Below, piece by piece: positions 10,588-60,825 of a DNA stretch of 64,000 nucleotides (its first letter is position 1; every line of letters begins with the position of its first letter). The notes under the pieces are model-generated. The model made no database searches. It was not told the DNA's origin and was given only the letters and a program-made list of their open reading frames with translations. The stretch is from IMG/VR virus record IMGVR_UViG_3300042691_055965, positions 62,001 through 126,000 of that record. One strand, 5' to 3'. A program made the translations under genes and the position numbers.

Positions 10588-11307
10588 ATGGACTTAAATA
10601 ATATAATAAAAAAAGTAGTTAAAGAAGCAAATTCCGATAGGTATGCCGGTTCATATAACGGACCTTTGTCTATGGGTGAAATCGATTGGGGTAAACAAGA
10701 ACTTGGACCTTTCGATACTAAAGTATCTAATTTCTTCAATGCCGAATTAGAATATGATAGTTATGACGGTTCATTAGATATGAGTAAAAAAAAGGCTAAA
10801 AGTCTTGAAACTAAAGCCAAAAAAATATCTTTATATAACAAAAAACACAAAACACCTAACGACGAAGATGGTGGAATAATAAATCAAACACCAGGTAAAA
10901 ACTTGAAGTTTGTTCCATTAAAAGAATGGGTTGATTTGGATTCAATTGTTTTAAATGAAGATTTGGCAGTATGGTTTGGAACAAAAAAGAAAGGTAAAGG
11001 TACTAAACAACCACAAGGTCCTTGGGTTAACATTTGTAGGAAAAAGAAAGGTGGAGGACATCCACCGTGTGGTAGACCTGAAGGTGAATCGAAGGGTTAT
11101 CCTAAATGTAGAGCCGTAGGTGTTGCAAGAAACATGACAGATGTACAAAAAAGAGCAGCATGTCAACAAAAAAGAAAAGCGGAAAAACAAGATACACAAA
11201 CAGGAAAAGGACAAAAACCTGTAATGACATCATATAAACCAAAAAAGAAAAGAACTCAAAAGGAATCTGTTGATTTTCTTGTAAAGAGTATTTTATCTAT
11301 TCTTTAA
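10588..11307 (+). CDS. Hypothetical protein, probable internal head protein with a basic Cys-containing domain
   Basis: Late motif upstream; N-terminal IIKKVVKE; EDLAVWFG...WVNIC...PCGR...YPKCR domain. Confidence 0.6.
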   Translation: MDLNNIIKKVVKEANSDRYAGSYNGPLSMGEIDWGKQELGPFDTKVSNFFNAELEYDSYDGSLDMSKKKAKSLETKAKKISLYNKKHKTPNDEDGGIINQTPGKNLKFVPLKEWVDLDSIVLNEDLAVWFGTKKKGKGTKQPQGPWVNICRKKKGGGHPPCGRPEGESKGYPKCRAVGVARNMTDVQKRAACQQKRKAEKQDTQTGKGQKPVMTSYKPKKKRTQKESVDFLVKSILSIL

Positions 11308-11582
11308 TTTAACTTTTTTTCTAATAATTCATATCTGATTGTTATTGGATTTTCATCAATATCTATTGAATCGTAAGTAATCAAGGTATTTTGATATGTT
11401 CCATAACCACAGAATCCTTCGTCATGTCTGACATTAGTTCCTTTATTAATTTCAATTCTTTTTCTGACTTCATAATTAATTTTTTTATCAGAAGAAAAAA
11501 CTTCAATATCGTGAAAATGAAACCGATTATCAATTTTAGAAAGTCCTCCAGTTCTTAACACATATACTTTTCTGTTCTTCAT
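11304..11582 (-). CDS. Hypothetical protein with its own host-type promoter
   Basis: 92-aa ATG ORF; TATCTTTG -7 box on the minus strand at 11604-11611. Confidence 0.65.
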   Translation of the reverse strand: MKNRKVYVLRTGGLSKIDNRFHFHDIEVFSSDKKINYEVRKRIEINKGTNVRHDEGFCGYGTYQNTLITYDSIDIDENPITIRYELLEKKLN

Positions 11583-11621
11583 ATAAATTTATTTGTTGAA
11601 GAACAAAGATAATAAAATTTT

Positions 11622-12083
11622 CTAACAATACGTACCTGAACAACGTTTTTTTCCGTCAAGACCTTTGATTTTTCCTTTACACACCTGAACTGCGTAACCA
11701 TTTGCATATGCCGAAGGGTAAACATCAAATTTTGCTTTTGCTGCAGATTTACCTCTAGCACATAGTTTTGTTCCTGTTTTTTTTCTACCTTCCATCATTA
11801 CCTCATCATCTTCCATATCCATTTCAGATGACATATCACCACCTTTCATTTCGTTCATTAGAAAATCAAAAACTTGATCCATGTTGTTTTTTGCTTCTGC
11901 AATATGGTCTTGAGCCCAATCATGTCCGTGATCTAAAATTTGTTCAATTTCAGATTTGTCCATCTCCAATAATGTTTCACATTGTCTTTTCATTTGTTCA
12001 AGATTTGAAAAGAACATATATCTTTGTGATTCTTGACGGGTTTCCATCAATACTTTTTTGATGATGTTATTAATATTTTTCAT
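11622..12083 (-). CDS. Hypothetical protein, probable internal head protein
   Basis: N-terminal IIKKVLME; HDWAQDHI segment; C-terminal LC.RG..AAK.KFDVYPSAYANGYAVQVC domain. Confidence 0.65.
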   Translation of the reverse strand: MKNINNIIKKVLMETRQESQRYMFFSNLEQMKRQCETLLEMDKSEIEQILDHGHDWAQDHIAEAKNNMDQVFDFLMNEMKGGDMSSEMDMEDDEVMMEGRKKTGTKLCARGKSAAKAKFDVYPSAYANGYAVQVCKGKIKGLDGKKRCSGTYC

Positions 12084-12086
12084 AAG

Positions 12087-20398: not shown

Positions 20399-21145
20399 TT
20401 ATGAATTGTGAATTCTTTTGAGTGTGTCTAAATATAAAGTTTTGTATTTTTTTAAGTAAATTCTAATTTCTTTAGTGTTTAGATTAGTCATTTCTCTTAA
20501 CGATAACAATACAATGTTTTTGTTGAATTTATTATTATCATTACCAATGAAAATATTTCCATAATTGTCAAATAATTCAATAAGTGCGTGACCTAGTTTT
20601 AATTCATTTTCATTTTCTATTTTATTGTGAACGTAAAGTCTTAAGTCACTCAAAAATGTATCTATAACTTTTTCGGCATCAATTTTTTCAAATTCCAAAT
20701 AATAAATCATATCAGGACGATTTTCTAATGTTGATGAAATATCTTCATAAGAAATTTTTCTATTTGTGTCTTTCTGATCTTTTTGGATTTGCCCCATAAG
20801 ATAGTTTTTACAAATAGTACCAAAATAAGAATACGCCTTCTTATTTTTTGCCGGTTTAAATTTATCAATTTTTGTCATTAGAAAAGAATGTGTGTCTGAA
20901 TGATTATCTTCAAAATTCATATCTCTTCTATATAATTTGTATCTTCGGATAATTGACTCTATCATTTTGTTCAATGGTTCCCGAAGACACGTATTATAGA
21001 TAAATTCTTTTTCTTCACGAGAGTTAGATAAAAGGTAATCTTTAACTGCCTGCTCTTCACGAACGTCAAAGTAATTATTTTTTTTTACTTTATTCGTCTT
21101 TTTAAATTCTATACTGGTTGTTTCATTTTCACCTGAAATAAACAT
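20399..21145 (-). CDS. Phage late-transcription sigma factor (gp55-like)
   Basis: KNNYF N-terminus; region 2-like KFKP...KAYSYFGTICKNY, comparable to gp55 F.P..S.NPFAYFTQI. Confidence 0.7.
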   Translation of the reverse strand: MFISGENETTSIEFKKTNKVKKNNYFDVREEQAVKDYLLSNSREEKEFIYNTCLREPLNKMIESIIRRYKLYRRDMNFEDNHSDTHSFLMTKIDKFKPAKNKKAYSYFGTICKNYLMGQIQKDQKDTNRKISYEDISSTLENRPDMIYYLEFEKIDAEKVIDTFLSDLRLYVHNKIENENELKLGHALIELFDNYGNIFIGNDNNKFNKNIVLLSLREMTNLNTKEIRIYLKKYKTLYLDTLKRIHNS

Positions 21146-21954
21146 TAAACTTCTTGTGGTTCGAATTTTATGTTTCTATCGGTAGTGAAAAAGTATTCTT
21201 TTTTTGCCGTTTCTAACCAAAAACTAACTTCAGTGTCTGAAATTCTTTCGTCGCTAAATTTGTAATTCCAAAAAATAGAACCTTCCCTCATGTTCGTATG
21301 TTTATAACCGATTCTTGGAATTGTCATAATTTTTACCGAATTATATGTAAGTCTTAAAAGGAATTCATATACAAATGTAAGTTTAATAGATGGTTTAAAT
21401 CCCCCATTGTCTTCAAACACTGATTTTTTAATTACCATACCACTGGTTTGAAAATTTTGATAATTTAAAAGTAAATCATTTGTAAGATATCCCATTTCTG
21501 TATTAATACTCACTGCAAAAGTTGCTTCGTTTGTAAATCCAGCAAACACACCTTTATCATCAGTATCAACAACTAACGGTAAAAAAGTATCAACTTCAGG
21601 ATATGATTCTTCAAACCGTTTCACATTTTTAAACCAAATTGCAGAGTATTCATCATCAAATTCCAAAACAGACACCCACTTACTTGTAGCATTTTTTACA
21701 CCCAAATTAACTTGTGATGAAAAGTCAGTATCACCAGTATTTTCAATCTTGACAACATTTATGTTTTCAAAGTCAATAGAATCCAACTTATTTTTAAGTG
21801 TTTCGTCTTGTGAATGTACAATGATTAATTCATTAATTTTGACTGTTTGATTTTTAATTGATTGTATACTTCTTTCAAATAGACTATCAAAATCCCTTAC
21901 ATTTGAAGAACTAACTGGTAAAATTACTGATACATTAAATTTATTCATTTCCAT
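21145..21954 (-). CDS. Glycosyltransferase, GT2/GT-A fold
   Basis: VSVILPV, SIKNQT, NLGV....SKWV.VLEFDD. Confidence 0.8.
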   Translation of the reverse strand: MEMNKFNVSVILPVSSSNVRDFDSLFERSIQSIKNQTVKINELIIVHSQDETLKNKLDSIDFENINVVKIENTGDTDFSSQVNLGVKNATSKWVSVLEFDDEYSAIWFKNVKRFEESYPEVDTFLPLVVDTDDKGVFAGFTNEATFAVSINTEMGYLTNDLLLNYQNFQTSGMVIKKSVFEDNGGFKPSIKLTFVYEFLLRLTYNSVKIMTIPRIGYKHTNMREGSIFWNYKFSDERISDTEVSFWLETAKKEYFFTTDRNIKFEPQEV

Positions 21955-21963
21955 AATATTTTT

Positions 21964-23022
21964 TTATTGTTCTACTTTTATTTTTTCTAATTGTTCAGAA
22001 AACGACTCTAATCTTTTTGTAAAATATGAATCAAACAAAGTCACAATATTTGATTCATAAGATTCTCTATTTTGAAATTCTTTTGCTGTGTTAGACATTT
22101 CTTCATATAAATTTTCAGAAATATTATCTTCGAGCCAATTTTGTGTAAAAGTTGAAAGAATGTCTACAATTTCATTAAACTGATAAGTCCATACTCCGTT
22201 ATTTTCTGTCATCCAATCAGGTTTCAATGATGGTATTTTACCAATTACTGGTGTACCTGAAAGCATTGATTCTAAAGGAAAAGTCCCAAAGGCTGATTCA
22301 TTGTCTACCCATACAGATACGAATGAATCTTTTAAAAAGTTTGCAAAATCTTTTTGTGTAATACCTCGCATGTCTCTAAATGTTATCCATCTAAATTGAG
22401 GATACTTTAAATAAAAGGTTTTAATAATTTTTGCTGTATCTCTTGGTTCTCTTGTATGAATTGCAATAATTGGTTTTGATGGTTTTTCTTTTTTAGTGAA
22501 TACTTCAGGAATATTAATAGATAATACATCAATACTTACATTTCTCATAATTTGATTGATATAATTTTTTTGGTATTCTGAAGTGGTAATACATTTCATA
22601 AAACCGTATTGACTCCAATTCACACCAGGTGGTAATGTTTCCAACATATAATCATACGATTGACATAGGACAATTTTTGCACATGGTAAATTTTTAATTT
22701 GTTCCATAACGTGCCCATAGATTTCAGGTATTATTACAAAATCTTCAGGTGCTATTGGTAAGTTTTGTCCTTCAATTACTTGGTGTGGTATTTCCATATA
22801 TTCTTCACCTAACCATTCAGAAACACCTTTATATTCACTTGTTTCGTGCATGATAATTGAGTTGTAACCATTTTTTCTTAACACAAGTGCCATGTCATAA
22901 ATGTGTCTGATACCCGCTCTTGGGTTACCTTTGGTATCTTGAACCAAAAAATAAATTCTTGATTGTTTGTTTTCAAGGTTTGATACCGATTGTTCAATTT
23001 TTTGAATTTTTTCTAATTCCAT
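21964..23022 (-). CDS. Glycosyltransferase, GT-B (GT4-like)
   Basis: AGIRHIY; IIPE; SAFGTFPLESM.SG.PVIG. Confidence 0.75.
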   Translation of the reverse strand: MELEKIQKIEQSVSNLENKQSRIYFLVQDTKGNPRAGIRHIYDMALVLRKNGYNSIIMHETSEYKGVSEWLGEEYMEIPHQVIEGQNLPIAPEDFVIIPEIYGHVMEQIKNLPCAKIVLCQSYDYMLETLPPGVNWSQYGFMKCITTSEYQKNYINQIMRNVSIDVLSINIPEVFTKKEKPSKPIIAIHTREPRDTAKIIKTFYLKYPQFRWITFRDMRGITQKDFANFLKDSFVSVWVDNESAFGTFPLESMLSGTPVIGKIPSLKPDWMTENNGVWTYQFNEIVDILSTFTQNWLEDNISENLYEEMSNTAKEFQNRESYESNIVTLFDSYFTKRLESFSEQLEKIKVEQ

Positions 23023-23027
23023 TTTAT

Positions 23028-23312
23028 TTATAAATTTTTAATTATACGGTTTATTAATAGTGTATTAAATGCAAATTTGAATGGTATGGATAAGTCTTTA
23101 CCAGCATGTGCTCCAAGTCCTTCGTCAATGTCTTCCCTTTCTGTTAGAATAACATCAACCATACCTTTTAAAATTTCATACTTGGTAACACTTATTTGTT
23201 GTTCGGGTGTACCACTGAAATTTTCTTCTTTGTTTTGTGTTCCTTCAAAACTTACACGTTTTTCGATTTCGTCGATGTCTAAATAATAATTTTCTCCTAA
23301 AAATTTTAACAT
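23028..23312 (-). CDS. Hypothetical protein
   Basis: Overlaps the upstream stop within the operon. Confidence 0.6.
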   Translation of the reverse strand: MLKFLGENYYLDIDEIEKRVSFEGTQNKEENFSGTPEQQISVTKYEILKGMVDVILTEREDIDEGLGAHAGKDLSIPFKFAFNTLLINRIIKNL

Positions 23313-23959
23313 ACTGTCATTTTTTGTATTATTTCATCGAACCCTTTTAGAACATCTATTTCGTATTTAGTTTCGATATTTTTATTGTATTCTGTTTTGT
23401 ATTTTACTATTGTTTTACCTTCAGGTGTATTTGTAATATAATCAGGATTTGCCGTAAGTAAAATGTCTACCTCATCCCACATTGTTTGAATTGTTGATTT
23501 TGAATAAAATTTTATCTTTTCAATTAAACAACCAAACTTTGATAAGAAAAATAATGTTGCAGGTTTGGATTTACCAACCTCATCTGAAACAATCAAAATT
23601 TCATATTCATCCCTATATTTCAAATAAAATTCATTCAAGTCGTTAAAAGTAAAAGTTTCTGTAGAACCGGCATGTCCAAAAATTTGCATTGCAAAATCTT
23701 CATACATAAAACTATATAGTTCTTCTTCATTTTTAAATCTAAAATGATTTGTTAAATCTAATGATGTAACATCACTAATGATTTCATAGTTGAATACTTC
23801 TTGTTGTAATACCTGACTAGTGTTTCCTGATTCGTCAATTTCATATGATACAATGTCATCGTCAGTTTTTTCATCAATCATATGTTTTTCATATAATTGT
23901 TTAAATTTACCAATAGTATCACGTAAAACACCATTAACTTCAATTCCTATTTTCTTCAT
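23306..23959 (-). CDS. NT5C/HAD-like protein with degenerate catalytic motifs
   Basis: KIGIEVNGVLRD (HAD motif I position), DILLTANP (motif IV position), C-terminal YN. Start revised to 23959. Confidence 0.55.
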   Translation of the reverse strand: MKKIGIEVNGVLRDTIGKFKQLYEKHMIDEKTDDDIVSYEIDESGNTSQVLQQEVFNYEIISDVTSLDLTNHFRFKNEEELYSFMYEDFAMQIFGHAGSTETFTFNDLNEFYLKYRDEYEILIVSDEVGKSKPATLFFLSKFGCLIEKIKFYSKSTIQTMWDEVDILLTANPDYITNTPEGKTIVKYKTEYNKNIETKYEIDVLKGFDEIIQKMTVC

Positions 23960-24677
23960 CGTATTTTTCAAGAATTTTTCCAATCAAAGGATTTCTAACG
24001 TTTTTAGCGTTTCTAAAATCATACACACCAATATCGTTTATATTATTAAATCTTTGAAGTGCGTCGTACAATCCCGATTGTTTTTTATCTTTATATCTAT
24101 CGGTTTGTTCCAAGTCACCAGATATAAAGAATTTACTATTATAACCGATTCTTGTCAATAGTAATTTCATTTGATTTGGTGTTGCGTTTTGTGCTTCTTC
24201 AAAAATCAAAATAGAATTGTCTATGTTCATACCACGCATGTATGCTAATGCAAAAACTTCTATAACTTCAGCATCTTTTAATTTTTCACGGGCATCTTTC
24301 CCAATAATTTTATTTAAAAGGTAGTAGGATGGAAAAATATATGGATCTAACTTTTCTTCTAAATTACCGGGTAATGAGCCTAATTTTTCTTCGGCTTCAA
24401 CCGCTGGACGTACAATAATAATTTTTTCATAACTATTCGAGGAATCCATAAGTAAATCAACCGCAGCTTTCATTGCTATGTAACTTTTACCTACACCTGC
24501 AGGTCCTGAACAAATTGTGATTTGATTTTCTTTGAGGATATTGTAGTAATCTTCTTGATTTGGTGATAAAAACTTATTTTTTTGTTTTTTCTTAATAACA
24601 GAATTTATGAAGTCTTTTCTTGAAAACGGTTTACCTTCAGGTTCTTCACTTTGAGTTTGTGGTTTTTTTCTTGTCAT
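23940..24677 (-). CDS. phoH: PhoH-like ATPase
   Basis: GPAGVGKS, RPAVEA.EKLGSLPG, LAYMRG, EEAQN, LTRIG, GD.EQ.D. Confidence 0.95.
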   Translation of the reverse strand: MTRKKPQTQSEEPEGKPFSRKDFINSVIKKKQKNKFLSPNQEDYYNILKENQITICSGPAGVGKSYIAMKAAVDLLMDSSNSYEKIIIVRPAVEAEEKLGSLPGNLEEKLDPYIFPSYYLLNKIIGKDAREKLKDAEVIEVFALAYMRGMNIDNSILIFEEAQNATPNQMKLLLTRIGYNSKFFISGDLEQTDRYKDKKQSGLYDALQRFNNINDIGVYDFRNAKNVRNPLIGKILEKYDEENRN

Positions 24678-24690
24678 TATGAAATTTTTC

Positions 24691-25509
24691 TTATTTATAC
24701 AACTTTTGTGAAAAATTTTTCATTTCTTCAATTTGTTGTTTTAGATTTGGTACGTCTACAAATTTATCATAAATAGACGTAATACTTCTGTCACAAAAAT
24801 TTGTAGCTTCCACAGGAACCACCTTTAAGTTTAATCCGTATATTTCACTGATTAATTCTACCAAATCTTTTTTATTAACTGTGTTAGAATGAATATGTTT
24901 AATCCCATTCCAAAAAAGATTTTCGTCAATAATTTTTTTACAAATTTTTGCAAATTGTAAACACGTCATACCGTTCCAAAAATGATTAGTAAATCCGTTT
25001 ACCGTGTTGTTTTTTTCGGATTTAATCCACTCGACTAAAGATCTACCTTGATTTATTTCTTCACCAATAATTGATGTTCTTATTACGGTGCAATTATCGG
25101 GCTCACCCAGTGCTTTTGACATACCATACACATCGCTAACATCGTATTTATCGTTTTCGTTATATTTTCCTTTATTACCCGTATAAACACAATCCGTAGT
25201 AGGATGAATCATTTTAACACCCAACAATTTACAAACATTGGACAACATTCTTGGGAAAACAGAATTGACTAAAATTGCATTCAAATCTCCTAATTCGTCT
25301 ACCCTTGGTTTGATAGTTCCTGCACAATTAATTAAAATGTCATTTTCTTTTATGTCAATATTAATTAATTGACTTTTTAATTTATTTTCGTCAATTTTTG
25401 ATGCGTCAATTTCTTTCCTTCCAACATTAACTATTTCATAAAATTCAGATAAATATGTTGATACATAGTTACCTAACATTCCTGTATTTCCTATAATGTA
25501 AACTTTCAT
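24691..25509 (-). CDS. rmlD: dTDP-4-dehydrorhamnose reductase-like SDR
   Basis: GNTGMLG, TDCVY.G..G.Y.E.D, YGMSK..GE, RTSIIG. Confidence 0.85.
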   Translation of the reverse strand: MKVYIIGNTGMLGNYVSTYLSEFYEIVNVGRKEIDASKIDENKLKSQLINIDIKENDILINCAGTIKPRVDELGDLNAILVNSVFPRMLSNVCKLLGVKMIHPTTDCVYTGNKGKYNENDKYDVSDVYGMSKALGEPDNCTVIRTSIIGEEINQGRSLVEWIKSEKNNTVNGFTNHFWNGMTCLQFAKICKKIIDENLFWNGIKHIHSNTVNKKDLVELISEIYGLNLKVVPVEATNFCDRSITSIYDKFVDVPNLKQQIEEMKNFSQKLYK

Positions 25510-25521
25510 AATTTTTATTTT

Positions 25522-25941
25522 TTATCTATAATTTTCTTCCCAGATATTCCATTTATTGTGTTCTTCTCTTATATCATCGTCTAAACTTTCAGACAATGTT
25601 GTCGTTGAAAAAAATAACAATTTAGTGTTTTCTTCTAATGATTTGAATCCGTTAAAATTACCTGGTGGGATAAAAAGTACTTTAGGTGATTTATCTGATA
25701 AAATGTATTTTGAAATTTCATTGGTTTCCATATTTACAACACCAATTAGTGCCGAACCCGATGCGACATAAACATATTTACCTTCTTTTTTATGTCCGTG
25801 CCAAGCCCTTATAAACCCTTTACTGTGGTTTTCTACGTGATAAAATCTTTTTACATTTTGGAAATTGAAGTCGTTAACAAAACGCACAGTACCTCTATCA
25901 TCAACAGAAATACCACCATTTATTAATTTTGTACCATTCAT
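25522..25941 (-). CDS. rmlC: NDP-4-keto-6-deoxyhexose 3,5-epimerase-like cupin
   Basis: DDRG, RAWHGH, LFIPPG..NGF. Confidence 0.75.
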   Translation of the reverse strand: MNGTKLINGGISVDDRGTVRFVNDFNFQNVKRFYHVENHSKGFIRAWHGHKKEGKYVYVASGSALIGVVNMETNEISKYILSDKSPKVLFIPPGNFNGFKSLEENTKLLFFSTTTLSESLDDDIREEHNKWNIWEENYR

Positions 25942-26897
25942 ACTAATTCATTTTTTTCTTTTTTATTTTTTAGATATGCCCCATTATGATATACTTTATC
26001 TTCTGGATTTGATACTCTATTTTCATTAAACATTTTTACCATTCTGATAACTTCGTCTTCTACGGTTACCTGTGGTTTATATTTAAAAACTTTTAATGAC
26101 TTTGAATTATCAACTTTATAATTTCTTGCATCTTGAAAACTAATTTCAGTGTAGTTTATTTTAGTTCCTGGAATCAATTTAGCTACCCTTTCACCTAGTT
26201 CTTTAATTATAACATTTTCTTTTGCTAAAACAAATATTCCTGAATATTTTTCTTTACAAGCTTCAGTAACATATTCGGCGATGTCTTTCACCGCTATTAT
26301 TGGTCTCCATTGTTCACCACCATTTATTGTTATTTCTTTTTCTTTAACTGCTTTCATTGTCAAAACATTTACAACTAAATCCATCCTTAAACGACTATAG
26401 GTGTCACCTAAACCAAATACGGTGCCCAATCTAAAAACAGTACCACCTTTTTGTAAAATGTATTTTTCTGCGGCTAATTTTGTCGAGGCATATGACGATA
26501 ATGGGTTTGTTTCACTTTCTTCATTTAACCATCCATTTTGTGCACCATAAACGGAACAAGTAGACATAAAAACTAAATGTTTGTTAGGTAAAACCACATC
26601 ACAAAAGTCTTTAATTGATTTGTAATTTATTTCTTCAGTAAGGTGTTGATCGACACTACATGCTGGATCACCAACAAGTGCAGACATTAAAACTATTATA
26701 TCAAAATTTTTGGATACGTTATATAGTTTTTCAGTATCCCTAATATCCCCATAAATAAAATTTATGTCTTTTAAGAACCTATTTTCGTACAATAAATTAT
26801 CAAAAACAGTTACTTCAAATCCGTCTCTAATTAGATAGTCACAAGTCAACCCACCAATATAACCTGCTCCTCCACATAACAATACTTTTTTTTTCAT
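25938..26897 (-). CDS. NAD-dependent epimerase/dehydratase
   Basis: GGAGYIG, STCSVYG, YASTK, RLGTVFG. Confidence 0.88.
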   Translation of the reverse strand: MKKKVLLCGGAGYIGGLTCDYLIRDGFEVTVFDNLLYENRFLKDINFIYGDIRDTEKLYNVSKNFDIIVLMSALVGDPACSVDQHLTEEINYKSIKDFCDVVLPNKHLVFMSTCSVYGAQNGWLNEESETNPLSSYASTKLAAEKYILQKGGTVFRLGTVFGLGDTYSRLRMDLVVNVLTMKAVKEKEITINGGEQWRPIIAVKDIAEYVTEACKEKYSGIFVLAKENVIIKELGERVAKLIPGTKINYTEISFQDARNYKVDNSKSLKVFKYKPQVTVEDEVIRMVKMFNENRVSNPEDKVYHNGAYLKNKKEKNELV

Positions 26898-26909
26898 TTT
26901 TTTAAAATT

Positions 26910-27491: not shown

Positions 27492-27531
27492 GTTGTAAAC
27501 ATGATTGTTTTTAATTTTTTGTAAACATTAT

Positions 27532-37319: not shown

Positions 37320-37320
37320 A

Positions 37321-39324: not shown

Positions 39325-39963
39325 TTACTTTTGTAACTTTTTTACTTTGGTAACTTTTCCTATGAATAAATGTTGCCCCACTTTAAATTGAATAACTTCA
39401 TTTAAATTTTCTGTGGATTCAACAATCATTCCTGCATCTTTTAGTTCTTCTCTTACAACATCCCTAACAGTGTCTCTTACAACATCCCTTATCATACTTT
39501 TGATTTCTGAAACATTTATATTTGAACTATAACTTTCTGAAACTGGCATTTTTGTTGGTTGTTGTGTTTTTACGTTTTCGGGGTAATCTGTAATTTTATT
39601 ATTACCCATTTTCATTAATCTTTGAGCACCTTCGATGATATCATCTGAAATTACAGTTGTTCCTACACTAGACGGTTGAACAATTGGTTGTTCAATCATT
39701 AATCTTTTTATTTCGTCTGGTAATTTGGAATTGATAATCTTTGTTTCTTCTATTGGTTTTGTTGGGTCGAATTGTCTTTGTGGTTTTTGTTCACTTAAAA
39801 ATTCTTGTGGTAAATTATAATTTGCTGCCACCGGCTCAAAATTGTCTACCATTGGAGTATTGATTCTTCTATTATCAATAGAACCTGGTTTAATTTGTTC
39901 TTGTCGTTCCATTATTTTTTTTGAAACTGCAAGTCTTTGCATTAACTCTTCTGCTGATCCCAT
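39325..39963 (-). CDS. Hypothetical protein (possible head protein)
   Basis: IINSKLP..IK motif; IRDVVRDTVRDVVREEL helix repeat. Confidence 0.6.
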   Translation of the reverse strand: MGSAEELMQRLAVSKKIMERQEQIKPGSIDNRRINTPMVDNFEPVAANYNLPQEFLSEQKPQRQFDPTKPIEETKIINSKLPDEIKRLMIEQPIVQPSSVGTTVISDDIIEGAQRLMKMGNNKITDYPENVKTQQPTKMPVSESYSSNINVSEIKSMIRDVVRDTVRDVVREELKDAGMIVESTENLNEVIQFKVGQHLFIGKVTKVKKLQK

Positions 39964-39969: not shown

Positions 39970-40371
39970 TTATGTTATATTTTCTTCATTATTAAATTTT
40001 GCGTTCACTAAAACCCTTGTCATTGATTTGTCACCATTAGGGTTGTAGTTCGGTCTCATTTCATAAAAATTATCCATTGTTGGTGATAATGTAAATATTT
40101 TATCTAATCTGAATAACCTCCATCCTGGTAATATGTTGTTTTCATTTTTTTCGCTATAGGATGCACCCTCACGTTCCCATGCTCTTAAAACTAAATTACC
40201 TTTTTTACTGTAACCCAAGCATACCGGTTCAATGGTTCTTAAACCTTTACCCCCATTATCTTTTCCATCATAATAAATTATTACAAGTTTTTTCTTTTTG
40301 ATACTATCTTGTAAATCATTTATTGATGCAATTTCGTTAATTATATGTTTTAAGTTACCTAAAAGTTTCAC
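39970..40371 (-). CDS. Stand-alone WYL-domain protein
   Basis: IYY...R.IEP..LG......LRAW...GWRLFRLDKI. Confidence 0.8.
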   Translation of the reverse strand: MKLLGNLKHIINEIASINDLQDSIKKKKLVIIYYDGKDNGGKGLRTIEPVCLGYSKKGNLVLRAWEREGASYSEKNENNILPGWRLFRLDKIFTLSPTMDNFYEMRPNYNPNGDKSMTRVLVNAKFNNEENIT

Positions 40372-40662: not shown

Positions 40663-41109
40663 TTATATTATTTTTTTTATCAGTTTATTTATTTTAATTA
40701 CTTCTTCTTTTAAATCATCCACAGTTGTCCCATGTTTATCATTTAAATTAAAACTGTTTTTTTCATGTGAAGAAAGGTGTGTATTTTGCATTCCAGCATC
40801 TTGTTTAGTGTCTTTACTATTTGAATCATTATCCCTCCAAACTCTTAAAACTTCATCACACCAATTTTTCATTCTGTATTTTCCATTCAAAACAAATGGA
40901 GCGTCTTCTTCGTTACCACTATATTCATCAAACCAATTTTTAATTCTTTTAATTTGTTGATAAGTAACGTAACCATTGTCCACCAAATCTTGGTTTCTAT
41001 TGTAACCTTCAGTGTTTGAATCGGCTTCAACAGAATTAAAACAATCCTTTAAATGTTTTATTAAAGAATCAGGTAATTTTGCTTTTCTATCGTAAAGATT
41101 TTTATTCAT
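40663..41109 (-). CDS. Hypothetical protein
   Basis: C-terminal LKEEVIKINKLIK. Confidence 0.6.
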   Translation of the reverse strand: MNKNLYDRKAKLPDSLIKHLKDCFNSVEADSNTEGYNRNQDLVDNGYVTYQQIKRIKNWFDEYSGNEEDAPFVLNGKYRMKNWCDEVLRVWRDNDSNSKDTKQDAGMQNTHLSSHEKNSFNLNDKHGTTVDDLKEEVIKINKLIKKII

Positions 41110-55717: not shown

Positions 55718-58618
55718 ATGGTAGCACAAGAAGAAATCGAACGCTTTTTATTAGGTGAAGACGAAGAAAAATATATCGTATCTATCGAATACGATTACAA
55801 AACATCCAAAATTTTTAAAGTAATACAGGACCCTGTAAAAGGTAAACTTTTACGAATGGATACTTTTATTCCGTTTGCTTGGGTTGGTGATTTAAGAGGT
55901 AAAAATTTTTATAAAAATAATAAAGATGCACAAAAACGTGCAATGTCTGAAAATGGTATCATCATTGAAAAACTTCAAGATCACGGTGATGAAAGACTTA
56001 AAACGGGTTTAACATTTATTGTTAAAACCACAAAAACATATTCTAACCTTATAAACTTTTTCAAAGGTGGTGGGCTTGATCCTTGGGGGAGGGACAATTC
56101 AGATTGTATTACTGTTTTATCTCCAGTGGAACAATACTTAATTCAAAAAAACAAAAGACTTTTTAAAGGGTTTGAAGAATACGATGAAATCCATAGATTC
56201 GTATTCGATATTGAAACAACGGGACTTGATCCGAAATCAAGTAGTATATTCCTTATTGGAATGAAAGACAATCGTGGTTTTTTGAAATTATTATCTGCAC
56301 AAAATCCTGATGAAGAAAGAAAGATGATTGTCGAATTTTTCAAAACAATCGACGAATTAAAACCTTCACTTATTGGTGGTTACAACTCAGCATTCTTTGA
56401 CTTTCCTTTTATTCTAAAAAGAGCAGAAATATTAAATCTAAACATTAAAAAAATAACGAAAACATTAAACCCCGATTATACTTTAAAACAAAAAGAAGGA
56501 ATATTGAAATTGGCAAATGAAATGGAACCCTATACACAAACACAAATGTGGGGTTACAACATTATAGATATAGCACACGCAGTAAGAAGGGCACAAGCAA
56601 TCAATTCAGATATTAAAAGTTGGTCTCTGAAGTATATTACCAAATTTATTGAAGCCGAAAAACAAAATCGTGTTTATGTTGAAGGAGATAAGATTGGTAA
56701 AATTTATTTTGACAATGAGGATTATTGGATGAATAAAGAAAACGGAGCCTACAAAAAAGTTGGTTTGGATGAAAATATAGATGAAGTTTGTGGTAGAAGA
56801 ACTGATGTCTATGATAAAACAACAGGTTCCAAAATAATTGAACAATACTTGGACGATGACTTGTATGAAACAATGATTGTTGACGAGCAATTTAATCAAG
56901 CAAATTTCTTGTTGTCAAAACTTGTACCAACAACATACGAACGTCTTTCTACTATGGGTACGGCAACTCTTTGGAAAATGATTATGTGTGCTTGGTCATA
57001 CAAAAACAATTTGGCATTACCTAAAAAGAAAGAAAAACGTAAATTTACGGGAGGACTTTCTAGGTTGGTTCAGGTTGGGTATTCAAGAAACGTATTAAAA
57101 CTTGACTACTCTTCACTATACCCTTCCATTCAGTTGGTACATGATGTGTTTCCTGCTTGTGATGTTACAGGTGCAATGAAAAGTATGTTAAAGTATTTCC
57201 GTGATACTCGTATTAAATATAAAAACTTGGCGGGGGAATACAAATCAATAGATTTAAAAGCATCAATTTCATACGATAGAAAACAATTACCAATTAAAAT
57301 CTTTATCAACGCATTCTTTGGTTCGTTATCTGCTCCTCACGTATTTCCTTGGGGTGATATTGATATGGGTGAACAGATTACTTGTACAGGTAGACAGTAT
57401 CTTCGTCAGATGATTATGTACTTTATGAAACGTGGATATGTTCCATTGGTGATGGACACGGATGGTGTAAACTTCGAAACCCCTGAAGATAGAGAAAACT
57501 ATAAGTACATCGGTAAAGGACTTAATGGTTTAGTTAAAGAAGGTAAAGAATATGTGGGTGCTGAAGCGGATGTTGCAGAATACAATGACTTATTTATGCG
57601 AAATGAAATGGGTCTTGATATTGATGGTGTATGGCCGGCAACAATCAACGTGGCACGTAAAAACTATGCACTTCTTACAGATAAAGGTAAAGTTAAACTT
57701 ACTGGTAACTCTATTAAGTCTAAAAAACTTCAAACATATGTTGCAGAGTTTTTGGATAAAGGATTAAGAATGTTACTTGATGGTAAAGGTGGTGAGTTTT
57801 TAGATTTTTATTATGAGTATGTAAGTAAAATTTATAATAAAAAAATTCCGTTAGCAAAAATAGCAAACAAATCCCGTGTTAAACAATCAATAGATGATTA
57901 TAAAGTACATATTACAAAAACAACAAAGGCGGGAAGTTTAATGTCTAGACAGGCACATATGGAACTTTTAATGAATGCAGGAAAAAAACCAGGTTTAGGA
58001 GATACTATCTATTATGTTAATAATGGAGAAAAGAAATCACACGGTGATGTTCAGAAAAAAACCACAAAAATGACAAAAAAACAAATAGAAGATTATATGA
58101 ATATTCATGGAGAGGTTCCTCCTGAAATGTTATCTAAAAGTGAAGTGATTCTAAATTGTTATTTGATTGATGAAAAAGAAATTGAAAACAATCCTGATTT
58201 ATTAGGTGAGTATAATGTTCCAAGATACTTGGCGGCATTTAACAAAAGAATTGAGCCGTTACTTGTTGTTTATAGTCCTGATATTAGAAAAGATATTTTA
58301 ATTGAAGATCCTAAAGATCAACCAATTTTTACAAAGTCACAAACTGTATTGGGTAGAGGATTTCCGATGAAAGAAAAGGATCAAGACAATTTAGATGAGG
58401 TGTTAACGCTATCTGATATGGAAATTAAATTTTGGCAGTCAGTTGGAATCGATCCGTACTATATGTACATAGATGATACCATTAATTTAGTTGATGAAAG
58501 TAGAGTTAAAAATAATAAAGAGTTGATGGAAAAAGAAATAAAAGTGTCAAAGGTTGATGAAGATGAATTTTTTGAGTTTGATACTGAAGCGGATTTAACT
58601 TCTTTAATTTTTGATTAA
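55718..58618 (+). CDS. Family B DNA polymerase
   Basis: ExoI FDIET, ExoII YN...FD.PFI, motif A DYSSLYPS, motif B K...NAFFG, motif C DTDG, KNYA. Confidence 0.93.
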   Translation: MVAQEEIERFLLGEDEEKYIVSIEYDYKTSKIFKVIQDPVKGKLLRMDTFIPFAWVGDLRGKNFYKNNKDAQKRAMSENGIIIEKLQDHGDERLKTGLTFIVKTTKTYSNLINFFKGGGLDPWGRDNSDCITVLSPVEQYLIQKNKRLFKGFEEYDEIHRFVFDIETTGLDPKSSSIFLIGMKDNRGFLKLLSAQNPDEERKMIVEFFKTIDELKPSLIGGYNSAFFDFPFILKRAEILNLNIKKITKTLNPDYTLKQKEGILKLANEMEPYTQTQMWGYNIIDIAHAVRRAQAINSDIKSWSLKYITKFIEAEKQNRVYVEGDKIGKIYFDNEDYWMNKENGAYKKVGLDENIDEVCGRRTDVYDKTTGSKIIEQYLDDDLYETMIVDEQFNQANFLLSKLVPTTYERLSTMGTATLWKMIMCAWSYKNNLALPKKKEKRKFTGGLSRLVQVGYSRNVLKLDYSSLYPSIQLVHDVFPACDVTGAMKSMLKYFRDTRIKYKNLAGEYKSIDLKASISYDRKQLPIKIFINAFFGSLSAPHVFPWGDIDMGEQITCTGRQYLRQMIMYFMKRGYVPLVMDTDGVNFETPEDRENYKYIGKGLNGLVKEGKEYVGAEADVAEYNDLFMRNEMGLDIDGVWPATINVARKNYALLTDKGKVKLTGNSIKSKKLQTYVAEFLDKGLRMLLDGKGGEFLDFYYEYVSKIYNKKIPLAKIANKSRVKQSIDDYKVHITKTTKAGSLMSRQAHMELLMNAGKKPGLGDTIYYVNNGEKKSHGDVQKKTTKMTKKQIEDYMNIHGEVPPEMLSKSEVILNCYLIDEKEIENNPDLLGEYNVPRYLAAFNKRIEPLLVVYSPDIRKDILIEDPKDQPIFTKSQTVLGRGFPMKEKDQDNLDEVLTLSDMEIKFWQSVGIDPYYMYIDDTINLVDESRVKNNKELMEKEIKVSKVDEDEFFEFDTEADLTSLIFD

Positions 58619-58947
58619 TCCATTTTCAAACCATCACTACTTAGTATGTACCAAAAATCACCAATTAGTTTGAATTCTACACATGCTCCTTTATTAAGTT
58701 CTATGATGTCAAACTCTTCATCTATTTTTTTGTCACTTGTGATGTTAATTACCGTAAGTGCTTTTACGATAACGTGGTCAGATGTTTTAGAATCCAAATA
58801 AAGGTTACATTCTGAAATACCTTTTACTACTATGAATTTTTCACCATTAGTATCATATTGACTATTACTTACAATTACAGATTCAGAAGATAAAGTTTCT
58901 TTTCCGTTTACAGTTCTTGTAATAGGTGTTGATTTGAATATTGCCAT
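58615..58947 (-). CDS. Small beta-rich protein downstream of the neck gene
   Basis: Start revised to MAIFKS (58947); C-terminal WYILSSDG. Confidence 0.55.
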   Translation of the reverse strand: MAIFKSTPITRTVNGKETLSSESVIVSNSQYDTNGEKFIVVKGISECNLYLDSKTSDHVIVKALTVINITSDKKIDEEFDIIELNKGACVEFKLIGDFWYILSSDGLKMD

Positions 58948-58954
58948 AAAGTTT

Positions 58955-60073
58955 TTAAATAACATTATAAGGACTTGTAAACGCTCTGAACTTTAAAGCC
59001 TTGTTCATATTTTCCGCTTGTAACCCTTTAATTTCCCATTGTTTTTCAGGTCTTAATCTTTCAAGTCTTAATTTTAGTTCTTCCCACAATATTGTTTTTT
59101 CATCTTTTGCTTCCGTTTGAAGTGAAGTGTATTCTAAGGTAAGTTCTGAATCCGGAGTCTTTAAGTTACCGCTATACTTACCTCTTACTCTTGCCAATGT
59201 TTCTTTACAATATGCGGTAAACCATCGTCTTACCCATGTCTTAGCAGGTGAATTTAATTCGTCCCAAGATATTTCATCTATTGGAACATCTGATGGTAAT
59301 CTTACGATGTCGGGATTTTTCTTCAAACAATCCTCCCTATCGAAAGTATCGTAATACCAATACCATACACGATATTGATTTCTTTGAATGTTTCCAAAAT
59401 CAAACTTTCCTCCAGGTACATTCATTAAGTGTATTGCTTTTTTTCCTTCAGGAAGTGCTGTTACCCTATATGTTAAATCACCTGTTATGATTCTTCTTTT
59501 CATTTGAATGTCTGCCATTCTTAAAAGAATGTCAAATGCTGGTGTGATAAAATAATTACCAGTAGTTCCCATTTGTGAAAAACCGGCACCACCACCAAGT
59601 CCAATACCACCAAAACCACCAAAACCACCCATAAACGGATCAAAATATGCTGCGTCAAGTTCAGGTCTTGCGAACCATAATAGTTCATTAAGTTCCCTTC
59701 CTGCAGGTATTTCATATATTTGTTGACCTGGTATTAAATCAATATAATCTTTTTCTAATACAGAATCACCACCAGCTTGAAGTCCAACTATCTTTGAATA
59801 TGCGTAAGTGTATTGGGTTTCCCAATCCATACTTCTTGTAGTAAAAGCCCTTGTTACAGATTGTTCATCCAAATTTAAACCATATAATGATGACCATTGA
59901 CTTTCAATAAGCCAATCATTAACGTGTTGTGCATAATCTTGTATGGAAAGTTCAAGAAGTGAATCCATCATTTCGTCTTCAAGTTCTACTGAACGTAATG
60001 GTGCACCCAAAAGATTTTTAATTCTTTTGTAAAGTTTACTTCTTTCTGGTTCTGTAATTATGGTAGTTGTCAT
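58955..60073 (-). CDS. Neck/head-completion protein (T4 gp13-like)
   Basis: LGAP...VEL, WVRR..TA.CKE.L..VRGKY, L..EA..E...L.EEL; late motif at 60085-60092. Confidence 0.8.
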   Translation of the reverse strand: MTTTIITEPERSKLYKRIKNLLGAPLRSVELEDEMMDSLLELSIQDYAQHVNDWLIESQWSSLYGLNLDEQSVTRAFTTRSMDWETQYTYAYSKIVGLQAGGDSVLEKDYIDLIPGQQIYEIPAGRELNELLWFARPELDAAYFDPFMGGFGGFGGIGLGGGAGFSQMGTTGNYFITPAFDILLRMADIQMKRRIITGDLTYRVTALPEGKKAIHLMNVPGGKFDFGNIQRNQYRVWYWYYDTFDREDCLKKNPDIVRLPSDVPIDEISWDELNSPAKTWVRRWFTAYCKETLARVRGKYSGNLKTPDSELTLEYTSLQTEAKDEKTILWEELKLRLERLRPEKQWEIKGLQAENMNKALKFRAFTSPYNVI

Positions 60074-60111
60074 AGACTTTTTTGTATAAATATTTTGCTA
60101 AATCAAAATAT

Positions 60112-60825
60112 TCAATACTTGTTTCTTTTAATTTGGGTGGTATACAAATCATTGATAAATCCCCAATTTACAACTTTCCAAAAATTGGAAGTGTATTTAT
60201 CCCTTTGATTTTTGTATTTTAAATAATATGCGTGTTCCCAAACATCTAAGCCTAATATTGGATAACCTCTTTCTTTTTCCGTATTCATTAGTGGGTTGTC
60301 TTGATTTGCAGTTGTTACTATTTTTAATCTACCATTATCTTTCAAAATTAACCATACCCAACCTGAACCAAACCTATTTTTTGCTGATTCTTCAAATTCT
60401 TCTTTAAAATTGTCAAATGAACCAAAAGTTTTTTCAATTTTTTCTTTAATCGGTCCTTCAAATTTTTGTTTTTTTGGTGATAACATTTTCCAAAATAAAG
60501 CATGATTAAATGCTCCACCTCCATTGTTTTTTACTTTGTCATTAAATTTGGATATACTTTTAATGATTTGTTCTAAATCTAAATCTTTACCTTTAACTTT
60601 TTCAAGTTCAACATTCAACTTATCAACATAACCTTTATAGTGTTTACTATAATGTGTTTTCATTGTTTCTGCATCAATAAAACTTTCAAGTGAATCGTAT
60701 TCGTATGGAAGTTTGTCTATACTTATTTTTTTGATTTCAGAAATGATATCTTGTTTTTTTGGTGAAACAACGTCAAGTTTAGATTCAATGATATCTATTT
60801 TTTTATGTAAACTTTTTAATAGCAT
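60112..60825 (-). CDS. sodA: Mn/Fe superoxide dismutase (Mn-type signature) with an N-terminal extension
   Basis: LPYEY..LE, H..KH..GY, NNGGG..NH, FGSGWVWL, NQD, DVWEHAYY. Start revised to 60825. Confidence 0.92.
   Translation of the reverse strand: MLLKSLHKKIDIIESKLDVVSPKKQDIISEIKKISIDKLPYEYDSLESFIDAETMKTHYSKHYKGYVDKLNVELEKVKGKDLDLEQIIKSISKFNDKVKNNGGGAFNHALFWKMLSPKKQKFEGPIKEKIEKTFGSFDNFKEEFEESAKNRFGSGWVWLILKDNGRLKIVTTANQDNPLMNTEKERGYPILGLDVWEHAYYLKYKNQRDKYTSNFWKVVNWGFINDLYTTQIKRNKY

What the first reader, a model, noticed from the sequence alone, without database searches (positions are those of the whole stretch)
10588..60825. Shared amphipathic IIK..(L/V)xE leader suggests a head-packaging signal on diverse cargo
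Unrelated small late proteins share a short helix ending in a T4 gp21-type (I/L/V)-x-E site: MDLNNIIKKVVKE (10588), MKNINNIIKKVLME (12083), MKLLGNLKHIINE (WYL, 40371), IRDVVRDTVRDVVREE (39325-39963), LKEEVIKINKLIK (40663-41109), and EEISELVKES in the scaffold. By analogy with the T4 capsid-targeting sequence of internal proteins, these would be packaged, processed by the prohead protease and injected.
Basis: inference. Interest (0 to 1): 0.6.

Follow-up and report, generated by a model that had tools for sequence, protein, structure and literature searches.

The report
Shared N-terminal leader on phage proteins
Two small proteins in this window carry the short form of a nearly invariant 22-residue N-terminal tag that this uncultured freshwater jumbo phage and its relatives put on dozens of unrelated small proteins; it most likely addresses them to the assembling phage head, as the T4 capsid-targeting sequence does, but this is untested.

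Summary
The six strings exist. Only two, at window 10588(+) and 12083(-), are N-terminal and related.

The leader M-K-(K/R)-I-I-R-L-T-E-S-D-L-x-R-I-V-(K/R)-R-V-I-x-E heads at least 15 ORFs of this 229-kb genome and 9-24 ORFs in each of four relatives. It gave 635 metagenome hits and 148 distinct copies in 0.95 Mb of IMG/VR DNA.
- It is always N-terminal.
- It is conserved as protein, because the codons vary freely.
- It stops at an invariant Glu, after which the cargos are unrelated.
- It is absent from 50,697 GenBank phages, Pfam, PHROGs and PDB, and nearly absent from 185,579 cellular genomes.

The phages have a T4-type head module: an S77/gp21 protease, a scaffold and a gp23-like capsid protein. 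The leader's end (V-I-N-E) matches the predicted capsid-protein maturation site (L-I-N-E|A).

Best reading, about 55%: a new capsid-targeting propeptide, unrelated in sequence to T4's, that the prohead protease removes. No proteomics exist, and most cargos lie in accessory-gene regions. The WYL protein, the 212-aa ORF, the 148-aa ORF and the scaffold string are not family members.

The parts
10588..10626 (+). Short-form leader (13 aa, MDLNNIIKKVVKE) of protein A
   Evidence: Leader HMM E 1.9e-6 and 1.2e-6. Only 4 in-frame codons lie between the upstream stop and the ATG, so a longer leader is impossible.
10588..11307 (+). Protein A, 239 aa. It consists of the leader and a basic (pI 9.7) cargo with 4 Cys. 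In relatives G001 and G005 the A ortholog is the first same-strand ORF after the capsid gene.
   Evidence: (phrog_23735, phrog_727, both of unknown function). A TATTTAT[AT] motif sits 25 nt upstream.
12042..12083 (-). Short-form leader (14 aa, MKNINNIIKKVLME) of protein B
   Evidence: Leader HMM E 5.6e-7. The G004 ortholog of B carries the full leader MKKIVRLNESMIQDLVRKVLQE. AF2 predicts helix 2-13, then a break (low confidence).
11622..12083 (-). Protein B, 153 aa. Its parts are the leader, a conserved helical domain, an acidic linker and a basic Cys-rich C-terminal domain. It is the last gene of the minus-strand operon that I take to be tail/baseplate genes.
   Evidence: (phrog_27331). Further conserved hydrophobic-x-E sites: LMNE at 11850-11861 and M-x-E|G at 11787-11798.
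1614..3425 (+). gp23-type major capsid protein. The predicted maturation site L-I-N-E|A is at 1782-1793, with cleavage after Glu60.
   Evidence: PF07068 at 4e-74. MAFFT places T4 gp23 FLTE|A opposite HLINE|A, which is identical in six genomes. BLASTP puts it just N-terminal of the first conserved core block.
33..1580 (+). Scaffold-like acidic protein in the gp22 position. It has a conserved (A/V)-I-N-E|N at 99-110 and three tandem MDEEEEFEGMY repeats.
   Evidence: It lies between the protease and the capsid gene in all six genomes. It has no family hit.
39970..40371 (-). WYL-domain ORF. It is not a leader-family member, but all six orthologs keep a 13-aa N-terminus ending in hydrophobic-x-E.
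   Evidence: PF13280 at 1.4e-5. The leader HMM gives no hit at E<10 in G000 and only E 1-3 in relatives.
39325..39963 (-). 212-aa ORF. The quoted motif is internal (residue 158 onward), so this is not a leader.
   Evidence: Orthologs give only weak internal HMM matches (domain i-E 0.03-0.07).
40663..41109 (-). 148-aa ORF. The quoted motif is C-terminal. Orthologs end in a leader-like helix, (I/V)TESLxRINxIMKKII.
   Evidence: It has a weak hit to phrog_7857, annotated internal virion protein (E 0.0011). The HMM does not reach significance.

Best explanation
The two N-terminal peptides are the short form of a virus-specific leader of about 22 residues. The leader is a short beta-strand-like K-R-I-I-R-L followed by an amphipathic helix, T-E-S-D-L-x-R-I-V-K-R-V-I-x-E. 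A clade of freshwater T4-like jumbo phages with genomes of about 290 kb, probably infecting Bacteroidota, places it on many unrelated, mostly small proteins.

I propose that it works like the T4 capsid-targeting sequence:
1. The leader docks each cargo onto the scaffolding core of the assembling prohead.
2. The gp21-family (Peptidase_S77) prohead protease cuts after the invariant Glu at the leader's end. It may also cut after the L-T-E inside the leader.
3. The freed cargo stays in the head and enters the host with the DNA.

Shown by tools:
- the leader family exists;
- it is strictly N-terminal;
- it is under protein-level selection;
- its cargos are diverse;
- it co-occurs with a T4-type head module;
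- its end resembles the predicted capsid-protein cleavage site.

Inferred only: binding to the core, cleavage, packaging and injection.
For: (1) Family and significance. At least 15 ORFs in this genome carry the leader. Relatives G001, G002, G003 and G005 carry 24, 9, 18 and 13. Shared N-terminal k-mers far exceed shuffles.

(2) Spread. A search with residues 1-40 gave 635 metagenome proteins at E<=0.1 within one length band, with a near-invariant leader followed by divergent sequence.

(3) Position. Every copy follows Met directly.

(4) Protein-level selection. Among 148 distinct copies the residues are invariant, while Leu, Thr, Ser and Arg codons vary freely.

(5) Cargo diversity. The cargos are unrelated by BLASTP except for one tandem pair. 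Their pI runs from 4.1 to 9.7, and the median ORF is about 132 aa.

(6) T4-type head module. An S77 protease lies just upstream of the window. It is followed by a scaffold-position ORF and a gp23 capsid protein. The protease N-terminus keeps L-(I/V)-E, like T4 gp21 LIE-9 (PMC9026906).

(7) Cleavage logic. T4 gp21 cuts after L/I-x-E, and T4 targeting sequences are 10-19-residue N-terminal propeptides on otherwise diverse internal proteins (PMC9026906, PMC3012670). Here conservation ends at (V/I)-(I/L)-x-E. The capsid protein has an invariant L-I-N-E|A where MAFFT places T4's L-T-E|A. The scaffold has (A/V)-I-N-E.

(8) Gene context.
- One leader ORF (98 aa, acidic) sits between the protease and the scaffold.
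- A's ortholog is the first same-strand ORF after the capsid gene in G001 and G005.
- B ends the operon I take to be tail/baseplate genes.
- A sense-strand TATTTATA motif precedes 7 of 15 leader genes against 35 of 215 others (p=0.009). The looser TATTTAT[AT] scan finds it before the protease, a 242-aa ORF upstream of the protease, the scaffold-like ORF, the sheath, a tail-fibre gene and a Hoc-like gene.

(9) Virus specificity. Only one hit appeared in 185,579 cellular species genomes, on a 3.3-kb contig of a Bacteroidetes MAG.

(10) Helix character. The helix is amphipathic, with a hydrophobic moment of 0.70; only 2% of shuffles reach it.
Against: - There is no virion proteome, no cultured relative and no cleavage data.
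- All leader-bearing contigs belong to one clade: CheckV completeness scales them all to about 290 kb. Co-occurrence with the S77 protease is therefore one phylogenetic observation, not many.
- Most leader genes lie in arrays of small ORFs among methyltransferases, a GlnA-like gene and a UvrC-like nuclease, not among structural genes. This resembles early or accessory regions.
- The TATTTAT[AT] motif also precedes a DnaB-like helicase gene, so it is not a clean late marker.
- Many cargos are acidic, whereas T4 internal proteins are basic. One ITESQY-type carrier is a 748-aa protein with DHH and SET domains.
- Hydrophobic-x-E is common in this I/K/N/E-rich proteome.
- The capsid-site alignment to T4 is approximate. 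BLASTP anchors only the following block.
- The AF2 model of B has low confidence (pLDDT 45).
- Complex prediction could not be run.
Confidence: 0.55

Rival explanations
1. The leader is a protein-protein address tag for a target other than the prohead. It would dock a repertoire of small phage effectors onto one conserved partner. The partner could be a host machine, a phage replication or assembly factory, or a phage chaperone or unfoldase such as the ClpB-like AAA+ protein encoded near leader genes in one relative. It need not be cleaved.
For: - Near-invariant sequence implies one conserved binding partner.
- Most leader genes sit in accessory-gene arrays with methyltransferases and nucleases, not in structural modules.
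- Cargos are small ORFans, as early host-takeover proteins are.
- A ClpB-like AAA+ gene lies within 7 kb of leader genes in L011.
Against: - This reading does not explain why conservation stops exactly at a Glu preceded by hydrophobic-I-x, the same pattern as the predicted capsid maturation site.
- It does not explain the leader ORF between the protease and the scaffold, or why A and B flank the head and tail operons.
- No precedent for such a tag is known to me in tailed phages, whereas the capsid-targeting precedent lies in the same head lineage (PMC9026906).
Confidence: 0.27
2. The leader is a membrane-targeting amphipathic helix, with a basic face and an Ile/Val/Leu face. It would place diverse phage proteins on the host inner membrane, for example for lysis, superinfection exclusion or envelope remodelling.
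For: - The helix has a high hydrophobic moment and a basic polar face.
- Some metagenome carriers have peptidoglycan-binding cargo (PF01471).
- Short structural look-alikes in the ESM Atlas include SLT and PG_binding clusters. This is a lead only.
Against: - Membrane-targeting helices are conserved in physical character, not residue by residue. Here R-L-T-E-S-D-L and the terminal Glu are essentially invariant across 148 copies.
- Mean hydrophobicity is negative, at -0.29.
- The strand-like KRIIRL segment has no role in this model.
Confidence: 0.1
3. The leader is an oligomerisation or DNA-binding element, the first half of a ribbon-helix-helix (beta strand plus helix A). It would make the carriers small regulators or dimers.
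For: By eye, K-R-I-I-R-L-T-E-S-D-L-x-R-I resembles the strand and helix-A pattern of CopG/Arc-type proteins. This rests on my own knowledge and was not tested with any tool.
Against: - No second helix follows. Sequence after the Glu is unconserved and often a low-complexity E/T/Q linker.
- There is no Pfam, PHROG or PDB match to any RHH family.
- The short form lacks the strand altogether, yet is kept in B orthologs.
Confidence: 0.05
4. The similarity is an artefact. It could be compositional chance in an AT-rich genome, recent gene duplication, or a conserved nucleic-acid element (a promoter, translation signal or recombination site) that happens to be translated.
For: The genome is 31% G+C, and I, K, N and E are abundant. 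The loose reader motif is indeed explained by composition.
Against: - k-mer sharing far exceeds shuffles.
- Cargos are unrelated.
- Synonymous sites vary freely while the residues stay fixed.
- The motif is only ever found at N-termini, never internally or in other frames, at E<1e-3.
Confidence: 0.03

Closest known systems
T4 capsid-targeting sequence (CTS) of internal proteins IPI, IPII, IPIII and Alt, removed by the gp21 prohead protease
   Same: - It is an N-terminal propeptide placed directly after Met.
- Length is similar: 13-23 aa here, 10-19 aa in T4.
- It is shared by otherwise unrelated, mostly small proteins of one genome.
- It ends in hydrophobic-x-Glu, the gp21 specificity.
- The genome has a gp21-family protease, a scaffold and a gp23-type capsid protein (PMC9026906, PMC3012670).
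   Different: - It shows no sequence similarity to the T4 CTS.
- It is about twice as long, with a strand-like part as well as a helix.
- It is used on 9-24 genes per genome rather than about 4.
- Cargos are often acidic.
- Most carrier genes sit in accessory arrays.
- Function is untested.
Long N-terminal propeptides of ejection and inner-body proteins in phiKZ, 201phi2-1 and SPN3US giant phages
   Same: - These are jumbo phages that package many proteins.
- A gp21-related protease cuts after Glu.
- Paralogs can share identical N-termini, and propeptides often hold several cleavage sites (PMC5694885, PMC9026906). Here L-T-E and V-I-x-E both lie in the leader.
   Different: - Those propeptides are mostly longer than 100 residues.
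- Their cleavage motif is S/A-x-E.
- They are shared only among paralogs, not across unrelated cargos.
- The present phages have a T4-type scaffold, which the phiKZ group lacks.
Conserved N-terminal anchor domains of phage tailspikes and tail fibres
   Same: A conserved N-terminal module docks variable C-terminal parts onto one virion site.
   Different: Anchors are folded domains of 100 residues or more on large trimeric fibres. Here the module is 22 residues, the cargos are small ORFans, and no fibre-like features were found.

Membership tests
T4-type capsid-targeting propeptide (functional class) | Located at the extreme N-terminus, 10-20 residues long | tested here: met
   All HMM hits start within a few residues of the first Met. 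Lengths are 13-14 aa (short form) and 20-25 aa (full form).
T4-type capsid-targeting propeptide (functional class) | Shared by otherwise unrelated proteins of the same phage | tested here: met
   The 15 cargos show no BLASTP similarity except for one tandem pair.
T4-type capsid-targeting propeptide (functional class) | Ends at a prohead-protease site (L/I-x-E in T4) | tested here: met
   Glu is invariant, and the P3 position is I or L in 147 of 148 copies (one V). This matches the predicted capsid site L-I-N-E|A. The match is by sequence only.
T4-type capsid-targeting propeptide (functional class) | Genome encodes a gp21-family protease and a scaffolding core | tested here: met
   PF03420 at 84 bits, at genome 60719-61135. 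A scaffold-position ORF and a gp23 capsid protein are present. S77 was found in 7 of 8 near-complete relatives.
T4-type capsid-targeting propeptide (functional class) | Carrier proteins are present in virions and are trimmed after the leader | not testable with these tools
   There is no cultured relative and the leader was not found in GenBank phages. This needs proteomics.
T4-type capsid-targeting propeptide (functional class) | The leader alone suffices to package a foreign protein | not testable with these tools
   This is an experiment.
T4 CTS (sequence family MKTYQEFIAE) | Sequence homology to the T-even CTS | not tested
   No alignment to the T-even CTS was run. By eye the two peptides share no similarity. 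The leader gave no tblastn match in 50,697 phage records, which include the T-evens, but that short-query search returned nothing at all, so it is weak evidence.
Ribbon-helix-helix (CopG/Arc/MetJ) | Strand, helix A and helix B forming a dimeric domain of about 45 aa | tested here: not met
   Sequence after the Glu is unconserved. There is no Pfam or PDB hit.
Sec, Tat or lipoprotein signal peptides and double-glycine leaders | A hydrophobic core of 10 or more residues, a twin-Arg motif with an h-region, a lipobox Cys, or a GG cleavage site | tested here: not met
   The leader sequence shows this directly. It is charged, its mean hydrophobicity is -0.29, and it has neither GG nor a lipobox.

The most novel reading that the evidence does not exclude
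The leader is not a head-packaging signal. It would be a new kind of universal address label by which a jumbo-phage clade routes a large, fast-evolving repertoire of small effector proteins to one conserved cellular or viral destination. That would be a phage-specific sorting system with no described counterpart.
Probability: 0.25. Interest if true: 0.85.

Novelty: new variant of a known kind. Interest (0 to 1): 0.64.

Why it matters
If the leader is a capsid-targeting propeptide, this phage clade would package and deliver a repertoire of 9-24 diverse small proteins per genome, with hundreds of variants in lakes. The three T4 internal proteins are the classic example of injected anti-defence proteins, and this would be many times larger.

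It would show that the targeting principle is general in the T4 head lineage, yet re-invented with an unrelated peptide. It would also mark out a catalogue of candidate injected effectors against Bacteroidota defences. And it would supply a ready-made 22-residue tag for loading foreign proteins into a jumbo capsid.

If it is not a capsid signal, a near-invariant virus-only tag on hundreds of ORFans points to an undescribed sorting route. Either way it gives a handle on a large block of viral dark matter that Pfam and PHROGs do not cover.

Tried and rejected
- **tblastn against GenBank phages.** The 27-aa leader and the 98-aa leader ORF gave no leader match among 50,697 records. The short query returned nothing at all, so it is weak evidence. 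The 98-aa query gave only unrelated weak hits.
- **Literature.** No paper holds the string LTESDL, and no paper on such a leader was found.
- **Complex prediction.** I requested leader with scaffold and protease.
- **AF2 of protein B.** With five orthologs the mean pLDDT was 45. I use it only for secondary structure, which gives helix 2-13.
- **Whole-record search of two JGI contigs.** These records are not held.
- **Co-occurrence with S77 as independent evidence.** Rejected, because all carriers belong to one clade.
- **TATAAATA, the T4 late promoter, as a marker.** Only 15 genes have it upstream. The oriented motif is its complement, TATTTATA. It also precedes a helicase gene, so timing remains open.
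- **Cargo function.** Pfam and PHROG scans of 30 or more carriers found almost nothing. The exceptions were DUF6576, DHH with SET, and PG_binding_1.
- **A second word search with a 452-aa carrier.** It found 25 proteins, most of them about the query's length and likely its orthologs.
- **ESM Atlas search of residues 1-30.** Scores were below 0.9, so the results are leads only.
- **Read laying.** Not used, because it would not bear on the question.


Full report
**Setting**

The window is bases 62001-126000 of a 229,188-bp IMG/VR virus record (31% G+C, CheckV completeness 76%). It is a distant T4-like myophage. The ORF at 1614-3425 is a gp23-type major capsid protein (PF07068, 4e-74; phrog_138).

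Its nearest cultured relatives are only 41-43% identical:
- Microcystis phage Mel-JY01;
- Flavobacterium phage immuto.

A Peptidase_S77 (gp21-type) prohead protease lies about 0.9 kb upstream of the window, at genome 60719-61135 (84 bits). In six related genomes the gene order is portal, small ORFs, protease, a 71-aa ORF, an acidic scaffold-position ORF, then the capsid protein.

The host is probably a freshwater Bacteroidota. The phage carries genes with T9SS sorting domains. The window's DNA is found in lake and freshwater metagenomes from many studies. The only cellular-genome hit is a Bacteroidetes MAG.

**Checking the observation**

All six strings exist. Only MDLNNIIKKVVKE (10588, +) and MKNINNIIKKVLME (12083, -) are both N-terminal and similar to each other.
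- The WYL string is N-terminal but does not match the family model.
- The IRDVV string starts at residue 158 of 212.
- The LKEEV string is at the C-terminus.
- The scaffold string starts at residue 42 and lies outside the stated coordinates.

On its own it means nothing in this I/K/N/E-rich proteome.

**What is really there**

A scan of the whole genome showed that the two true cases are the truncated form of a much larger family. The full leader reads M-K-(K/R)-I-I-R-L-T-E-S-D-L-x-R-I-V-(K/R)-R-V-I-x-E.

It heads at least 15 ORFs. Their genome starts are 1433, 3697, 4283, 50164, 50713, 61583, 72588 (window 10588), 74083(-) (window 12083), 211804, 216449, 220442, 222877, 224204, 225823 and 227134.

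A subgroup begins M-K-I-I-I-T-E-S-Q-Y.

Shared N-terminal 5-, 6- and 7-mers occur in 5, 4 and 3 ORFs. In 300 shuffles, and in random internal windows, the maxima were 3, 2-3 and 2. A profile of the leaders hits only N-termini, in no other frame or position, at E<1e-3.

The short form derives from the long one. Orthologs of protein B carry the short form in four genomes and the full form, MKKIVRLNESMIQDLVRKVLQE, in a fifth.

**Spread**

- Residues 1-40 of one carrier retrieved 635 metagenome proteins at E<=0.1 within the 99-315 aa band alone. The leader was almost invariant and the rest unrelated.
Many were on contigs of 240-297 kb.
- The same pattern found a single 3.3-kb contig among 185,579 cellular species genomes.
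- Relatives G001, G002, G003 and G005 carry 24, 9, 18 and 13 leader ORFs. One 20-kb stretch holds six.
- CheckV completeness values scale all carrier contigs to genomes of about 290 kb, so this is one clade. S77 was found in 7 of 8 near-complete members.
- The leader was not found in 50,697 GenBank phages, Pfam or PHROGs, the PDB, or the searchable literature.

**Nature of the constraint**

In 148 distinct copies the residues L, T, E, S, D, L, R, I, V, R, V, I and the final E are fixed or nearly so. Their codons vary freely. Leu uses TTA, CTA, CTT and TTG. Arg uses AGA, CGT, CGA and AGG. Selection therefore acts on the peptide, not on a nucleic-acid signal.

The helix is amphipathic, with a hydrophobic moment of 0.70; only 2% of shuffles reach it. 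Conservation ends abruptly at the Glu. The next residue is most often Q, N, S, E or G, and after that there is no conservation.

The 15 cargos in this genome are unrelated to one another except for one tandem pair. They range from pI 4.1 to 9.7 and are mostly 75-230 residues. Across IMG/VR the median ORF is about 132 aa. Almost none has a known domain. The exceptions are PG_binding_1, DUF6576 and a DHH-plus-SET protein.

**Mechanism**

The closest precedent is the T4 capsid-targeting sequence. It is a 10-19-residue N-terminal propeptide shared by otherwise diverse internal proteins. It gives them affinity for the scaffolding core, and gp21 removes it by cutting after L/I-x-E (PMC9026906, PMC3012670).

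The parallels here are these.
- The same head lineage and protease family are present.
- The position and length are the same.
- Conservation ends at hydrophobic-(I/L)-x-E.
- A second L-T-E lies inside the leader, and giant-phage propeptides often hold several cleavage sites (PMC5694885).
- The protease N-terminus keeps G-I-L-(I/V)-E, like T4 gp21 LIE-9 (PMC9026906).
- The capsid protein has an invariant H-L-I-N-E|A (Glu60), followed by a variable Ser/Thr-rich stretch. MAFFT places T4 gp23's F-L-T-E|A opposite it.
- The leader's commonest ending, V-I-N-E, is nearly the same tetrapeptide as that capsid site.
- The scaffold N-terminus has (A/V)-I-N-E.

The capsid alignment is approximate. BLASTP anchors only the next conserved block, 14 residues further along in T4.

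Gene context also helps.
- One acidic 98-aa leader ORF sits between the protease and the scaffold in this genome.
- A's ortholog is the first same-strand ORF after the capsid gene in G001 and G005.
- B closes the minus-strand operon that I take to be tail/baseplate genes.

A sense-oriented TATTTATA motif 11-26 nt before the start codon precedes 7 of 15 leader genes against 35 of 215 others (p=0.009). The looser TATTTAT[AT] scan finds the motif before the protease, a 242-aa ORF upstream of the protease, the scaffold-like ORF, the sheath, a tail-fibre gene and a Hoc-like gene. It also precedes a DnaB-like helicase gene, so it is only suggestive of late expression.

Protein B has two more conserved hydrophobic-x-E sites at its domain boundaries: F-L-M-N-E, and M-x-E|G before the basic Cys-rich tail. 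B might therefore be cut into pieces as T4 core proteins are. This is speculation.

**Against the capsid reading**

- Nothing shows that these proteins are in virions or are cut.
- Co-occurrence with the protease is a single-clade observation.
- Most leader genes lie among methyltransferases, a GlnA-like gene and a UvrC-like nuclease. That looks like an accessory or early region, although the T4 ip genes also lie outside the head operon.
- Many cargos are acidic.

I put the capsid-targeting reading at about 0.55. The alternatives are:
- a non-capsid docking tag, about 0.27;
- a membrane-targeting helix, about 0.10;
- a half ribbon-helix-helix or oligomerisation element, about 0.05;
- an artefact or nucleic-acid signal, about 0.03.

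**The other cited proteins**

The WYL ORF is not in the family by profile. Even so, all six of its orthologs keep a 13-residue N-terminus of the form M-K-L-x(5)-K-x-hydrophobic-I-x-E.

More generally, N-terminal hydrophobic-hydrophobic-x-E sites in non-family ORFs are followed by Gln in 7 of 38 cases, against 8 of 222 internal sites (p=0.002). This echoes the Gln preference after the leader. It is simply unsupported.

The 148-aa ORF's orthologs end in a C-terminal helix, (I/V)-T-E-S-L-x-R-I-N-x-I-M-K-K-I-I, that resembles the leader. The ORF also has a weak hit to a PHROG annotated as internal virion protein (E 0.0011). This is unexplained.

**Novelty**

As a functional class this is a known kind, a capsid-targeting propeptide. 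It would be a new variant for these reasons:
- it is unrelated in sequence to the T4 signal;
- it is about twice as long;
- it is used on many times more genes;
- it is undescribed in Pfam, PHROGs and the searched literature;
- it is confined to uncultured freshwater jumbo phages.

Noticed in passing
window 3628-10545 (+): Five ORFs with Bacteroidota-type signal peptides sit between the capsid gene and protein A in this genome only. The first is a subtilase (Peptidase_S8) with SprB repeats and a T9SS C-terminal sorting domain. The second also has an SprB repeat and the sorting domain, and the third has an SprB repeat. Relatives lack the insert. These may be phage-borne T9SS substrates or a host-derived insertion. 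IMG/VR labels the record 'provirus'.
   Followed up: partly
window 40663-41109 (-) and orthologs in L147-L151: The orthologs of this 148-aa ORF end in a conserved C-terminal helix, (I/V)TESLxRINxIMKKII. It resembles the N-terminal leader but sits at the opposite end of the protein. The ORF has a weak phrog_7857 hit, annotated internal virion protein. Its role is unknown.
   Followed up: partly
genome 216449-218695 (L006:11450-13696): A 748-aa protein has an ITESQY-type leader, a DHH phosphoesterase N-domain and a SET methyltransferase domain. A 526-aa G001 protein with the same kind of leader also has the DHH N-domain.
   Followed up: partly
whole genome; for example upstream of window 10588, 12713(-), 16247(-), 43850, 50354: A sense-strand TATTTATA motif, the complement of the T4 late-promoter TATAAATA, lies before 42 of 230 genes. 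In the looser TATTTAT[AT] scan many copies sit 11-13 or 19-26 nt before the start codon. The motif precedes many structural genes. It is probably a promoter element of this phage.
   Followed up: partly
window 33-1580 (+): The scaffold-position protein is extremely acidic. It holds three tandem copies of MDEEEEFEGMY at residues 208, 219 and 230. Its N-terminal 50 residues are conserved across the clade.
   Followed up: no
window 11622-12083 (-); L004:1231-1698: The helical middle domain of protein B (RYMFFSNLEQ...HGHDWAQDHI) recurs in a 642-kb uncultured huge phage (LR756502), fused to a different N-terminal part. B's and A's C-terminal basic Cys-rich domains match small ORFs that lie next to each other in Pelagibacter podophages, and also match ORFs in cyanophages.
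   Followed up: partly
window 21000-39300 (-) and 60112-60840 (-): A large island carries sugar-nucleotide and glycosyltransferase genes: two NAD-dependent epimerase/dehydratase-family ORFs (RmlD-like), a UDP-GlcNAc 2-epimerase and a GT2 glycosyltransferase. There is also an Fe/Mn superoxide dismutase gene. A family-B DNA polymerase is at 55718-58618.
   Followed up: partly
genome 3697-4245 (L005) and L141/L142 ORFs next to B: Several ITESQY-type or leader-like ORFs continue into a DUF6576-type motif (IDxILDKIxxxG...L(T/S)xxEK).
   Followed up: no
L011:16849-18888 (-): A related 280-kb contig encodes a 679-aa ClpB-like double AAA+ protein within 7 kb of leader genes. I did not check whether this genome has one.
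   Followed up: no
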